A program made the position numbers and the translations under genes. A stretch of 63,823 nt of DNA, filler included, from Reticulomyxa filosa (lineage: Eukaryota > Protista > Foraminifera): assembly GCA_000512085.1 (NCBI GenBank). It is 26 parts of 26 records of this genome, joined end to end, with 100 filler letters (N's around TTAATTAATTAA, not from the genome) between each part and the next. Parts side by side here need not be neighbours in the genome. Positions count along the whole stretch, not along the records: positions 4,886 to 7,348 come from ASPP01034508.1; 25 more parts are not named here. One strand, written 5' to 3'. The notes beneath the pieces are model-generated. The model saw only the letters and a program-made list of their open reading frames with translations. It did not search any database and was not told where the DNA came from. Positions 3,552 through 42,399 of this stretch are shown one piece after another (positions within the stretch are counted from its first letter, which is position 1; each line of letters opens with the position of its first letter).

Positions 3552-4785
3552 AGAGATGATTGTGTTTCTCCATGAAAAAACAACATTTAATCAATATCTA
3601 CGAATCGTGTAGTTTTTAAATATCATTTTGATTTAGTTTTTTATTAAGTATTTAAAATTTTTCCAAAAATTTATTCTTTCATTTACTTTAAAAAATTTTT
3701 TGTGGTTGCATGAGTATGATAATATTGTTTTATAAAATTTAATTCAAGTTTACCAACGTATTAAATCTCATTTGGCTTTTTTAACTGACTGTATTCTCTT
3801 TGGCATCGACTTTATTAAGGTTTCACAAATGTTTGTTTTTATTTTTTCACATTCTATTTCGAATTGGTTCCAAAGTTCTTTCGTAGTATTAAATGGTCCT
3901 TTTTTGTGAATCATTGTCTTTACTATCTTACAAAGATTTTCAATTGGATTTAAATCAGGTGAATTTGGAGGAAAATTCATTGGTTTAATTTTTTTTTAAC
4001 AATTTCATAATTTTTTCCGATTTATGGTATGTTGAATTATCTTGCTGGAAAATACAATCTTTTTTATTTTCTAAGAAGCAATTCCCGCTCTTTAGCATTT
4101 CGTCAGATAAAATTTCTTTATATATAAGTATTTACTCCACCTTCCACCTTGCAAGCGTAACATGCTCCAAAACATGACTAGACTAAAATGCTTCCACCAC
4201 CAAATTTTGCTATTCTTGTTATGAAATTTTCGTCTAATGGTTGTCTTGGTCTTTTCCATAAATATCTTATAAAATCACTTATATTTAAATTAATCCTGCT
4301 TTATCTGAAAATAAAACCTTTTTACAGTCAAACGTCCAACTTTCGTGATCTAACGTAAATTCATATATTGCTTTTTTGTGTTTCATTGCCACAAATGGTT
4401 TTTTCTTTTTTGTAATAGAACTTAGCCCCTTTGCTTTAACATATTTGTAATTGTCGAACGCAAAACAGTAGTAAAATTTCTTCTTTACATTTCTATTATA
4501 AAATATCTTGCTGTAAATGCTTACCAGTTATAATCCATCTGACAATAATACGATGCAATCTTAAAGATATCTTTTGCGGACGTCCAGTGCGTTGTTTTTT
4601 CAAAATTCTACTATCTTTTTTAAAAGTTAAAAACCATTTCCTGACACACTAATGGCTAACTTTAAATTCTTTGGCCACTTTACGATAGCTTGGCCCATTT
4701 CGTATCATTTCGACAGCACGACCTTTCACAAAACCATCTATATGTTTTCACATTCTAACAAAAATAGCAAAATGTCGATCAATAT
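3552..4785 (-). mobile_element. Degenerate Tc1/mariner-family DNA transposon (transposase pseudogene about 4753-3768 plus subterminal repeat)
   Basis: Broken frames give HTH GPSYRKVAKEFKVSH, GRPQKIS, IFQQDN and FPPNSPDLNPIENL. Bases 3555-3635 resemble the terminal repeat at 33490-33640. Confidence 0.9.
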
Positions 4786-4885: not shown

Positions 4886-5164
4886 ATTGCTGCTTTTAGC
4901 AAAAATGCTGTCATGATTGCCAACAACACGGCCATCTCTCGCTTGTTCTTCGAACGCATTTCCAGAAAATTTGATCTCATGATGACCCAGTATGCATATG
5001 TTCATTGGTATCGTGGAGAAGGAATGAGTGGGAGGGATATCCCTGAGGCCCGTGAGGACGTGGGATTTTTAGAAAAAGACTATCTTGATGTTTTGTGCGA
5101 TGGGCTAACAGATGATCCTGATGATGATTATACCAATGATGATGATGATGATAACTATTATTAA
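4886..5164 (+). CDS. Divergent alpha-tubulin (foraminiferan alpha2 type), C-terminal fragment
   Basis: KNAVMIANNTAISR..ERIS.KFDLM..AYVHWY.GEGM..EAREDVGFLEKDYLDV, acidic tail and terminal Tyr. Confidence 0.9.
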   Translation: MAAFSKNAVMIANNTAISRLFFERISRKFDLMMTQYAYVHWYRGEGMSGRDIPEAREDVGFLEKDYLDVLCDGLTDDPDDDYTNDDDDDNYY

Positions 5165-6429
5165 CTTTGCTACATGGCATATCAAATATCATTCTTTTTT
5201 TTTTTTTTTTTTTTCCATACACCAAAAAAAAAAAATCGACAAGTTTAATTTTATCAAAATAAAACAATATGTCGATTTTGAGCGGGTTTAGTGATATTTT
5301 TTTGTTTTTGTTTTTTTTTTTTTTTTTTAGTATTGACTACATTTTTTGCATTTGAAAACGCAAGTCATATTATTTCCATTTTCTCTTATGTTTACAACGT
5401 CTCTTCATTTTCTAAGGTCTTTATTTTGGAAAAGTAATACATCTTGCAGTTTTTTATGTACAGAAAAAAATCTTAAACGACATAGTTGGTATTGAAAAAA
5501 ATCCTTTTAAATTTATCACACGTTCTGCATGATTCAAAAATTTCTCTACAGTGTAGTTCAATTTTTTTAAAAAAAATCACCACGAACAAAAAAAAAAAGG
5601 TGTTACCCCTTTTTGATTATAGAAAAGAGATCATACACTCTTCTCCATGCTCAAGCATTTTGTGCGTTTCAAAAAAAATGTTAAAAAAAAAAAGGAAAAC
5701 ACTATCGAATTATCCTAATTCCAATGACAGATTTTCATATGTTGAAGTTCGCATTGATAGTGCATGGAATTCCAATCAATTTGGAGCAGCATATTGTTAT
5801 GGCCATCATTGGAGAGGCTGGAAGCTTTACGAAAAAAACGGACCGATGTGTCCCAAATCAGAAGTACAATTGGGCCACAAAAAAGCCTCCGCAAATGTGA
5901 AAAATGTGGTGTAGATAAGACAAATTGCGACACGAGCAAAACAAATACATGGGAATCCATGCTTCTTATACACAGACATCATCATCAACCGTTTCATCTG
6001 TTTATGTCGAACATTTGCAACGGCTGTGTTGAATAGTTTGCCATTCCAACCTTTTAAATTAAAAGATTTTTTTAAAAAGTTGTGTTTAACCTGACTAAAA
6101 TGGATGATTACATTCCAACAAAAGCATTTTGATTTTAGAAAAAGAAAGAATGATAATTGATTATCAACAATACACAATAATATGAAGTCTGTGTGAAACA
6201 AATTCATATGATAAAATAATTTTTTTTTTGAACGGTTGAATTTTAAAAAGGTCGCATCTATCACCAATATAACTTATTTCATAGAAAACAAGTAGTTCTG
6301 CAAAAAGGAAAATATTTACTAGTTTTTTGTCTTTTCAATAATATCTTTTGAGCATACTCAAATTAGCAAAAAGAAATAAAAACCATATTTAAAGTTAACA
6401 AATATTTTAATTGCTTTTTCATTAAAAAA

Positions 6430-7348
6430 TTAATTCATTTTACTAAATTTTATAATAATTTTATCAAAATCATCGATCCATCCAAAGTTTATTTCTGAAG
6501 TTCGAATCCAATATTCAATAATATATTTTATTTCTTGCTTTGTCTGTCCATTTTTATTATTAATCAATCAGTTTCACACAATAAAATTTATTTTTGCTTC
6601 ATCAAAATAAGTAAATAATTACCAGCTGTGAAACATCCCATAAACGCATTTTAGTCATCATGTGAGTTGATACTGATACATGTTTATCATCTTTCCCTCC
6701 AATGATGTAAATATCATTGTTTTCCTCATTCAATGTTGCAGCACAATAATACAATGAATTGGGTAAAGCGTTTTTAAATGTCATCCATTTGTTTTCTCGA
6801 ATTGAGTACTTGTACACTGATTTTGAAATACCACTACCATATCCACCAAAGAATAAGATTACATCATTGATACAAACATATGCATATGCATAGAATAATG
6901 CAATATCCTTAGAAACAGGTACTTTATGAAACTGAAAAGTGTTGTTATCTTCATCATATTCAATTGATAATCCTGCCTTTCTACAAAATAACATCATTTG
7001 ATAATTTTGCTTATTAGTTTTCATCATTTCTTGCCCTTGTCCATTTTCTGACTTTGATACAAAGCAATGATAAAATATTGCTCTATCAATTGGCAAAGTA
7101 TCATGTTTAATAAATTGAAATGTATTTAAATTAAACACATTAATATCATTTGATCGATGAGTGATAAATAACAAATGATTATTACTTCCACCAATCACTG
7201 CACGCACTCCTTGATAATTATAATTTTGATCTCTTCCAATGATAATTGGATTATTGTGATCGTCTGTGAAAGGGATCCATTGATTGTAATTGCTTAATTC
7301 ATTGGATTTGTTTGATATATCACTCCAAACACTTACATATTTCATCAC
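6430..7348 (-). CDS. Kelch-like beta-propeller protein with C-terminal WIR/GWIDDF module (5' partial; exons 7348-6623 and 6543-6430)
   Basis: Kelch hallmarks ILFFGG, VYKYSIRENKW, IYIIGG. GT-AG intron 6622-6544. Last exon TKQEIKYIIEYWIRTSEINFGWIDDFDKIIIKFSKMN*. Confidence 0.8.
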
Positions 7349-41175: not shown

Positions 41176-42399
41176 TGGCTGTCAATAATAGCAATGAAAA
41201 AAACAAGAGACCGTTTAAACATTTGAGAAAAAAAGCAACACTGTATTCAGTTAGGATTTGGTGTTAACGTTTGGAGTAAGTTGTAACCAAATCAAAAAAT
41301 GTAACCAAAAAAAAAAAAAAAAAAAAATAGTCTGCAGAAGAGATCACAATGATTTTGGAAAGATGGATTCGGTCATTGTCTATCCGATTAGGATGGATTG
41401 ACGACTTCAATATAATTATCTCACAATATGTTTGGTATAATCGCTAGGGTCTATATAGTTTAATTTGTTGGGTCTGGATTGCATCTGCAAACGTGCAAAC
41501 AATAAAAACGAACAGGCTAAATACTTCAAACTAATCAAAGTGCTTGACGACCACTTTCGAACGGTGACGAGTGTGACATTTTCTCCAGACGACACGAAAA
41601 TAGCATTAACATCGTATGACACCACTATTCGAATCTGGGAAGTGCCATCCGGGGACGTAGCGCAAATGTGCAAGGGGCACACACATTGGGTCAACAGTGC
41701 AGATTTTTCAAGAGATAGCAGTTTAATAGTGTCGGGTTCCGACGACAAAACAATTCGATTGTGGGATACAAATACCGGCAAAGAAATAAAAAATTTGAAG
41801 GACATGCGCTTAGTGTTATGAGCGTGCACTTTTCACCCAACGCACAAAACGTGGTATCCAGTTCAATTGACAAGACTATTCGACTGTGGGACGTACAGTC
41901 TGGACAAGAAGTGAAAAGAATGATCGGACATTCCAATGTTGTAAAAACAGTACAATTTTCTCCAAATGCTCAAACTATTGTCTCAGCTTCGTATGATGCT
42001 GTCATTGCAATATGGGACGTACAGTCTGGAGAAAAGATGTACGAATTGCTGAAACATGTAAATCGGGTAATGAAAGTGAGATTTTCTCCAGATGGTCTTT
42101 TCCTTGTTTCCGGCTCGGATACCGGCACAATTCGGGTATGGGACGTAGCGTCTGGGAGTCAAACCACAATTTTGCAAGGACACAAATCTGGAGTCACGGA
42201 TGTAAGGTTTTCACCAAATGGCCAAACTATTGTGTCGTGTTCCAATGATGGGACTATTCGAATATGGGATGTGAAGTCTGCAAAAGAGGTACAGAGAATT
42301 TATAACCATTCCAGAAGTTTGACCGGAATAGATATTTCATCTGAAGGTGATACACTTGTGTCTTCCTCTATTGATGGAACAATCCAATTGTGGGAATGA
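41176..42399 (+). CDS. WD40-repeat protein (about 7 repeats) with N-terminal WIR/GWIDDF module
   Basis: Exons about 41176-41249, 41331-41429 and 41516-42399. Repeats GH...V.FSP...S.D.TIR.WD. One base is missing in the A run near 41790. Confidence 0.9.

What the first reader, a model, noticed from the sequence alone, without database searches (positions are those of the whole stretch)
6430..6543. Exon-encoded 33-aa WIR/GWIDDF module shared by unrelated beta-propeller proteins: candidate lineage-specific F-box/SOCS-box-like adaptor
Seen: the last exon of the Kelch gene (TKQEIKYIIEYWIRTSEINFGWIDDFDKIIIKF) aligns without gaps to an N-terminal exon of the WD40 gene at 41331-41429 (SAEEITMILERWIRSLSIRLGWIDDFNIIISQY), with 16 of 33 residues identical. 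A phase-0 intron precedes the motif at the same position in both genes. Neither exon appears in the ORF track. Established: short helical modules fused to either end of Kelch/WD40 propellers are the layout of cullin-RING ligase substrate receptors (F-box, SOCS/BC box). Inference: this is a shuffled docking module that plugs many variable propellers into one core complex. I do not recognise a named domain for it.
Basis: partly seen in the sequence, partly recalled or inferred. Interest (0 to 1): 0.85.

Follow-up and report, generated by a model that had tools for sequence, protein, structure and literature searches.

The report
Two-helix module joining Kelch and WD40
The short exon is the real last exon of a Kelch-propeller gene of the foraminifer Reticulomyxa filosa. 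It encodes an unnamed, so far species-specific two-helix module that sits next to Kelch or WD40 propellers in hundreds of genes and probably mediates protein-protein contacts, but its partner is unknown.

Summary
It follows a 79-nt GTAAT...AG phase-0 intron after the Kelch ORF. The piece is a whole Reticulomyxa filosa contig, and GenBank's model RFI_34450 already includes the exon.

A profile of the module ("M") finds 191 cluster representatives (E <= 0.001) among 1.84 billion proteins. All 20 that I sampled are R. filosa. Only three layouts occur apart from fragments: M-WD40, Kelch-M and Kelch-M-WD40. All 10 Kelch loci I read carry an intact M exon, including 6 whose annotation missed it.

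M matches no Pfam family and no solved structure by sequence. AlphaFold predicts a helix-turn-helix outside both propellers, at modest confidence. M is more conserved than the propellers beside it, and 16 of its 35 positions are hydrophobic.

My best reading is an interaction (self-association or docking) module that links Kelch and WD40 propellers. The link would be in cis in the fused proteins and possibly in trans between Kelch-M and M-WD40 genes, which often lie head to head.

The cullin-RING adaptor idea is neither supported nor excluded. Sharing may reflect fission or fusion within one superfamily rather than shuffling among many hosts. No RNA data could be obtained.

The parts
6623..7348 (-). 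3' part of the Kelch-propeller exon. It is cut at 7348 by the contig edge and ends ..WDVSQL.
   Evidence: ORF. Pfam Kelch_1, Kelch_4 and Kelch_2 score above their cut-offs. It is 100% identical to RFI_34450 and 99% to RFI_23989. The propeller is confidently modelled in the near-identical copy.
6544..6622 (-). Phase-0 intron of 79 nt, GTAATT...ACAG.
   Evidence: Sequence. Five paralogs have the same donor type and position, with intron lengths of 77-91 nt. The genome's mean intron length is 87 nt (PMC13746701). Read-through stops after six codons.
6433..6543 (-). Terminal exon encoding module M (37 codons). Predicted helix 1 covers about residues 2-16, a turn 17-19, and helix 2 residues 20-34. 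W12, R14, G21, W22, I23, F26 and Y/F33 are nearly invariant.
   Evidence: Translation. Profile score of 65 bits in a six-frame scan. Conservation tables. Helix-turn-helix in the AlphaFold model of a Kelch-M-WD40 protein.
6430..6432 (-). TAA stop, the natural end of the protein.
   Evidence: All nine distinct Kelch-gene M exons stop 2-4 codons after Y/F33. Sequence downstream is not conserved between paralogs: identity is 0.53, against 0.80 in M.

Best explanation
Window 6543..6433 is the true last exon of a Kelch-propeller gene of Reticulomyxa filosa. It encodes M, a module of about 35 residues that is so far specific to this species.

Shown:
- M is a separate exon behind a phase-0 intron.
- It occurs in hundreds of genes and only next to propellers: Kelch-M, M-WD40 or Kelch-M-WD40.
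- It is the best-conserved part of these proteins.
- It matches no named family.

Predicted: M folds as two helices outside both propellers.

Inferred:
- Both helices carry hydrophobic faces too broad for a lone hairpin, so M must be buried against something.
- Most likely M pairs with another M, or docks on one common partner. It would then tie a Kelch propeller to a WD40 propeller, in cis in the fused proteins and in trans between Kelch-M and M-WD40 proteins, which are often encoded head to head.
- The Kelch-M tail after Y33 may be a read-through of the intron that follows M in Kelch-M-WD40 genes.
For: Exon and splice:
- In locus L001 the intron is absent, and Kelch and M are one continuous ORF. 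This confirms frame and junction without RNA.

Spread and constraint:
- 10 of 10 Kelch loci carry an intact M exon, including 6 of 6 models annotated as reading into the intron.
- In a rough simulation only 41% of such exons stay stop-free after 10% change per site, yet 9 of 9 distinct ones are open.
- A decayed copy in L003 shows what a dead one looks like.
- The profile search found 191 representatives.
- Layouts among 147 representatives: M-WD40 88; Kelch-M 18; Kelch-M-WD40 at least 10; M alone 26, all short models. WD40 is found by Pfam in 98 of 147.
- Mean identity in M against the flanking propeller is 0.53 vs 0.38 (M-WD40) and 0.70 vs 0.64 (Kelch-M). Between the two groups M is 0.51 identical.

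Structure:
- AlphaFold on a Kelch-M-WD40 protein gives helices 345-359 and 363-377 at pLDDT 49-67, between propellers at about 85-98.
- 16 of 35 positions are at least 70% hydrophobic, with hydrophobic arcs of 240 and 200 degrees.

Gene arrangement:
- A divergent M-WD40 gene lies 0.7-2.4 kb upstream of the Kelch gene in L003, L005, L008 and L010, and a relic lies upstream of the second Kelch gene in L003.
Against: - There is no experimental or co-folding evidence for any partner or for self-association.
- No RNA run was listed, so splicing rests on comparative evidence only.
- dN/dS in M among five Kelch paralogs is 0.86 (35 codons), against 0.53 for the Kelch part. The intron is nearly as similar between paralogs (0.71) as the exons (0.75-0.80). 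Part of the conservation inside the Kelch family therefore reflects recent duplication.
- The moderate pLDDT of M could also mean that the fold is simply mispredicted.
- Fused proteins hold one M, not two, so trans pairing is not required by the data.
Confidence: 0.5

Rival explanations
1. Cullin-RING adaptor box. M docks the propellers, as substrate receptors, onto one ligase core, as the F-box does with Skp1, the SOCS/BC box with Elongin B/C, or the DCAF H-box helix with DDB1.
For: - The layout fits: a short helical element directly before a 7-blade WD40 propeller or after a Kelch propeller.
- In DCAFs an alpha-helical H-box just N-terminal to the WD40 domain binds DDB1 (PMC3928422).
- M is the constant part beside variable propellers.
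Against: - No F-box, SOCS-box, BTB or LisH match appears in 142 copies, even at E <= 10.
- The PDB sequence search is empty.
- The WDxR signature of DCAFs is not a family feature here: R takes 10% and K 26% of the fourth positions in 350 W[DN]xx motifs.
- Known boxes sit on a fixed side of the propeller. M sits C-terminal to Kelch and N-terminal to WD40, and between them in fusions.
- No partner was tested.
Confidence: 0.12
2. Structural neck only. M is the N-terminal extension or inter-propeller connector of one WD40 family. The Kelch-M genes are Kelch-M-WD40 genes that lost the WD40 exons and keep M as a tail with little function of its own.
For: - Helix 2 of M runs straight into the first WD40 strand in the model.
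- True Kelch-M-WD40 genes exist, with a phase-0 donor right after Y33.
- The Kelch-M tail of 2-4 codons after Y33 resembles the start of such an intron.
- dN/dS in M of Kelch paralogs is 0.86.
- There is no WD40 remnant downstream in the window.
Against: - M is intact in 10 of 10 Kelch loci and more conserved than the Kelch propeller.
- W12, G21, W22, I23 and F26 are 93-99% conserved across all layouts.
- M is not confidently packed on either propeller.
- A passive linker would not need 16 hydrophobic positions in 35.
Confidence: 0.25
3. Repeat-family by-product. The Kelch-M / M-WD40 cassette is a recently amplified, largely non-functional or selfish duplicated unit, and M is conserved only because the copies are young.
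For: - There are hundreds of copies; 324 Kelch relatives were scored.
- The assembly is 30.5% repeats (PMC13746701).
- Introns are 0.71 identical between paralogs and dN/dS is 0.5-0.9.
- Decayed relics exist.
- Many gene models are broken.
Against: - dS of about 0.39 between paralogs is not young.
- M-WD40 representatives are below 50% identical overall, yet keep the same seven residues at 90% or more.
- Open frames are kept in all Kelch copies read.
- Conservation differs strongly from position to position, which is a mark of selection on the protein.
Confidence: 0.1

Closest known systems
LisH motif (about 33 residues, N-terminal to WD40 in LIS1, TBL1 and others)
   Same: Similar length. Two short helices (for M; established knowledge for LisH). 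It sits directly before a WD40 propeller and has a hydrophobic surface suited to a four-helix dimer.
   Different: No Pfam LisH match in 142 copies. The spacing of conserved aromatic and Gly positions differs. M also occurs C-terminal to Kelch. Dimerisation is untested.
DCAF H-box / helix-loop-helix of DDB2 and CSA (CRL4 receptors)
   Same: A helical element immediately N-terminal to a 7-blade WD40 propeller (PMC3928422).
   Different: No sequence relation was shown. WDxR is not conserved. M also follows Kelch. DDB1 binding is untested.
F-box (FBXW, F-box/Kelch) and SOCS box (WSB)
   Same: A short helical module fused to WD40 or Kelch propellers: a constant box beside a variable propeller.
   Different: No Pfam F-box, F-box-like or SOCS-box hit. 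An F-box is three helices of about 45 residues and always N-terminal. M is two helices of about 35 residues and sits C-terminal to Kelch.
BTB-BACK-Kelch (KLHL) proteins
   Same: A Kelch propeller combined with an oligomerising or docking element.
   Different: No BTB or BACK domain; only Kelch families are hit. The extra element here is C-terminal and tiny.

Membership tests
Kelch-repeat beta-propeller (host gene) | Kelch repeats detected by Pfam and a propeller fold | tested here: met
   Kelch_1 scores 33.9 bits (cut-off 20.1), Kelch_4 31.9 (21.6) and Kelch_2 25.4 (21.3). The AlphaFold model of the near-identical copy has mean pLDDT 83.5 and an all-beta propeller.
F-box | Match to Pfam F-box or F-box-like profiles | tested here: not met
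   No hit on the window peptide at E <= 1. Among 142 copies at E <= 10 there is no F-box hit, only one stray FBA_2 hit.
F-box | Binding to Skp1 | not testable with these tools
   No multimer prediction or experiment was available.
SOCS box / BC box | Match to the Pfam SOCS_box profile; C-terminal position after the recognition domain | tested here: not met
   No hit. The position criterion is met only in Kelch-M proteins. In WD40 proteins M is N-terminal.
LisH | Match to the Pfam LisH profile | tested here: not met
   No hit in 142 copies at E <= 10.
LisH | Two-helix motif forming a four-helix dimer | tested here: inconclusive
   Two helices are predicted at pLDDT 49-67, with broad hydrophobic faces. 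Dimer formation could not be tested.
DCAF (CRL4 receptor) H-box | Alpha-helix just N-terminal to the WD40 propeller | tested here: met
   Helix 363-377 abuts the first WD40 strand at 380. This shows position only, not homology.
DCAF (CRL4 receptor) H-box | WDxR motifs in the WD40 repeats | tested here: inconclusive
   Of 350 W[DN]xx motifs, 34 end in R and 91 in K. Only 25 of 103 proteins have any WDxR.
DCAF (CRL4 receptor) H-box | Binding to DDB1 | not testable with these tools
   No co-folding or experiment was possible.
BTB-Kelch (KLHL) | N-terminal BTB and BACK domains | tested here: not met
   The precomputed Pfam lists of 120 paralogs hold only Kelch or propeller families.

The most novel reading that the evidence does not exclude
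M is a pairing module that assembles Kelch-M and M-WD40 proteins, which are often encoded as divergent gene pairs, into two-propeller complexes. Hundreds of variable Kelch and WD40 propellers would then form a combinatorial recognition repertoire in this giant syncytial foraminifer, for example for self/non-self or cargo recognition. The Kelch-M-WD40 fusions would be the single-chain version.
Probability: 0.15. Interest if true: 0.8.

Novelty: new variant of a known kind. Interest (0 to 1): 0.5.

Why it matters
If M is an interaction module, a single 35-residue element organises what may be more than 1% of the genes of R. filosa: 324 Kelch relatives, plus well over 100 WD40 cluster representatives, out of 39,965 genes. 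It would be a new, independently evolved answer to the problem solved elsewhere by the F-box, SOCS box, BTB and LisH, namely how to plug many variable propellers into a common assembly. It also gives a practical handle. The module profile finds family members and corrects many gene models that stop inside the intron. The head-to-head Kelch-M / M-WD40 pairs and their fused versions offer a directly testable prediction of who binds whom.

Tried and rejected
- RNA evidence: the look-up of sequencing runs listed no run.
- Word-indexed search restricted to the module region found only 11 Kelch paralogs and was too insensitive. The exhaustive profile search replaced it.
- ESM Atlas look-alikes of an M-bearing N-terminus gave no usable feature hit, and the structure rows were short helices of no meaning.
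- The PDB structure comparison of the Kelch-M-WD40 model returned only WD40 propellers (WDR5, G-beta, LIS1 WD40). M was not covered.
- Pfam on ten N-terminal regions upstream of M found nothing except WD40 in fused models and one weak TPR.
- A first dN/dS on unaligned Kelch segments was unreliable and was redone on a codon alignment.
- The apparent 'KQL/KQS' extension before M in WD40 models was rejected as part of the module. It is the translated 3' splice site (..AAACAG) in models that read through the acceptor.
- The R. filosa genome paper (Curr Biol 2014) is not held. No paper holds the motif string.
For folding I used the public protein of the near-identical copy (P0001:1-362) and a public Kelch-M-WD40 protein.

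Full report
**What is in the window**

The usable piece (4886-7348) is a whole 2463-bp contig of Reticulomyxa filosa. A protein search with the long minus-strand ORF returns RFI_34450 at 100% identity on a contig of exactly this length. It also returns RFI_23989 at 99% on a second contig. That second contig matches the piece at 99% apart from one 173-nt indel.

- The ORF 7348..6602 is a Kelch propeller (Pfam Kelch_1, Kelch_4 and Kelch_2 above cut-off). It is cut at its 5' side by the contig edge.
- On the minus strand the exon ends ..CAG CTG at 6623.
- The intron is 6622..6544: GTAATT...ACAG, 79 nt, phase 0.
- The next exon, 6543..6433, reads TKQEIKYIIEYWIRTSEINFGWIDDFDKIIIKFSKMN, followed by TAA at 6432..6430.
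- The mean intron length in this genome is 87 nt (PMC13746701).

**Is the exon real?**

No RNA run was listed, so the evidence is comparative.

1. 57 of the 120 best Kelch paralogs are annotated with this module at their C-terminal end. The others end in ..SQLVMICLF.., which is the translated intron.
2. I fetched loci for six of those read-through models. Every one has an intact, unannotated module exon behind a GTAAT..AG intron; the five introns measured are 77-91 nt. Counting all loci, 10 of 10 Kelch genes have it.
3. In locus L001 the intron is missing, and Kelch and module form one open frame (..RIWDISQL-EIIQFVIKHW..). This is a natural check of the junction and the frame.
4. In a rough simulation only 41% of such AT-rich exons stay free of stops after 10% change per site, yet nine of nine distinct copies are open. 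A copy with a stop lies in L003.

GenBank's model for the window gene continues past the module through a non-GT/AG 'intron' into 144 further residues. No paralog supports this. The sequence after the stop is 0.53 identical between paralogs, against 0.80 in the module. I take that extension to be an artefact.

**How widespread, and with what partners?**

A profile of 44 module copies (A1) was run against 1.84 billion cluster representatives. It gave 191 hits at E <= 0.001 and 35 at E <= 1e-10. All 20 that I looked up, including the weakest listed, are R. filosa singletons.

Pfam finds WD40 in 98 of the 147 new representatives. My own domain mapping gives these layouts:

| Layout | Representatives |
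|---|---|
| M-WD40 | 88 |
| Kelch-M | 18 |
| Kelch-M-WD40 | at least 10 |
| M alone (all short fragments) | 26 |

A few other models look like fusions of neighbouring genes. Regions upstream of M in longer WD40 proteins hold no Pfam domain. The partners are thus two propeller types, not many.

The Kelch-M-WD40 proteins are genuine genes. In L001 the donor GTACGT follows ..NY of the module, and the acceptor ..AAATAG leads into IKGYELLMVLQGH, the first WD40 strand. This matches other fused proteins.

In the WD40 genes read, the module exon has phase-0 boundaries on both sides:

- Acceptor: an AG directly before the first module codon in L002 and L005, and four codons upstream in L003.
- Donor: a GT a few codons after Y33.

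**What the module looks like**

No Pfam family matches the window peptide. None recurs among 142 copies scanned at E <= 10; in particular there is no LisH, F-box, SOCS box or BTB. PDB sequence searches with both profiles give nothing below E = 0.3.

- AlphaFold on the near-identical Kelch-M copy gives a confident propeller. It gives a helix for module residues 2-15 at pLDDT about 65-69, and the rest falls below 50.
- AlphaFold on a Kelch-M-WD40 protein, with an 83-row alignment, gives two helices (345-359 and 363-377) at pLDDT 49-67. They lie between a Kelch propeller at about 85-90 and a WD40 propeller at 97-98. Helix 2 runs into the first WD40 strand.
- Structure comparison found only WD40 propellers and did not cover M.
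- Across 142 copies W12, R14, G21, W22, I23, F26 and Y33 are 90-99% conserved. Sixteen of 35 positions are at least 70% hydrophobic, and the hydrophobic arcs of the two helices span 240 and 200 degrees. That is more than two helices need to pack on each other.

**Constraint**

M is more conserved than the propeller beside it in every group: 0.53 vs 0.38 in M-WD40, 0.70 vs 0.64 in Kelch-M, and 0.51 vs 0.46 and 0.41 in the fusions. M of WD40 genes and M of Kelch genes are 0.51 identical.

Two results weaken this. dN/dS in M among five Kelch paralogs is 0.86 (only 35 codons), against 0.53 for the Kelch part. The intron is 0.71 identical between those paralogs. Within the Kelch family, part of the similarity is therefore due to recent duplication.

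**Gene arrangement**

In L003, L005, L008 and L010 an M-WD40 gene lies on the opposite strand, with its M exon 0.9-2.4 kb upstream of the Kelch gene. A decayed M exon lies about 0.7 kb upstream of the second Kelch gene of L003, which is the near-identical copy of the window gene. That is 4-5 of 9 Kelch genes with enough upstream sequence. By my rough estimate this is far above chance for families of a few hundred members in a 102-Mb assembly. The window piece itself holds no WD40 remnant.

**Reading**

- Shown: a real terminal exon; a discrete, species-restricted, unnamed module; three layouts; high conservation.
- Predicted: a helix-turn-helix outside the propellers.
- Inferred: M is an interaction element. 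Either it self-associates (LisH-like in principle) or it docks on a common partner, and in doing so it couples Kelch and WD40 propellers. The fused genes and the divergent gene pairs point to Kelch and WD40 members acting together.

The DCAF-type WDxR signature is not a family feature, and the H-box comparison rests on position only (PMC3928422). A purely structural neck and a young repeat family are the other rivals.

Public proteins of the same family were used instead.

**Novelty**

No paper in the library holds the motif or discusses Kelch in Reticulomyxa. The genome paper itself is not held. The proteins are public but unannotated for this element. I rate it a new variant of a known kind: a short helical module beside propellers.

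Noticed in passing
window 4886-5164 (+): The 3' end of a divergent alpha-tubulin gene, matching alpha-tubulin residues about 372-447 (E 9e-17). It has an unusual acidic tail ending ..DDDDDNYY and is convergent with the Kelch gene.
   Followed up: partly
window 5726-5898: A 173-nt stretch, richer in G+C than its surroundings, that is absent from the otherwise 99% identical contig ASPP01020642 (L003 6736/6739). It is an indel between alleles or recent duplicates.
   Followed up: no
window 5827-6429 (-): GenBank model RFI_34450 skips the natural stop after the module through a splice that is non-GT/AG in the near-identical L003 copy. It then adds 144 low-complexity residues. No paralog supports this, so it is probably a gene-model artefact.
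   Followed up: partly
L003 1583-1672(-)/2699(+); L005 682-774(-)/1692(+); L008 2224-2310(-)/4167(+); L010 1360-1452(-)/3883(+): Kelch-M genes often have an M-WD40 gene head to head upstream, with the two start regions 0.9-2.4 kb apart. This suggests a duplicated two-gene cassette with a shared promoter region.
   Followed up: partly
L003 4219-4329 (-): A decayed module exon with in-frame stops, about 0.7 kb upstream of the near-identical copy of the window gene. A weak WD40-like fragment lies at 4453-4557 (-).
   Followed up: no
proteins P0001-P0124 (Kelch paralogs), N-termini: 25 of 111 complete Kelch models start MGN.., and 21 fit the PROSITE-like N-myristoylation pattern. Some M-WD40 models (for example P0157) also start MGN. 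Membrane anchoring is possible.
   Followed up: no
L002 985-2349: Several annotated WD40 gene models use non-canonical 'introns' that seem to bridge frameshifts. These are either assembly errors or pseudogenes.
   Followed up: no
window 5190-5330 and 5560-5700: Long poly(T) and poly(A) tracts in the intergenic region between the tubulin and Kelch genes.
   Followed up: no
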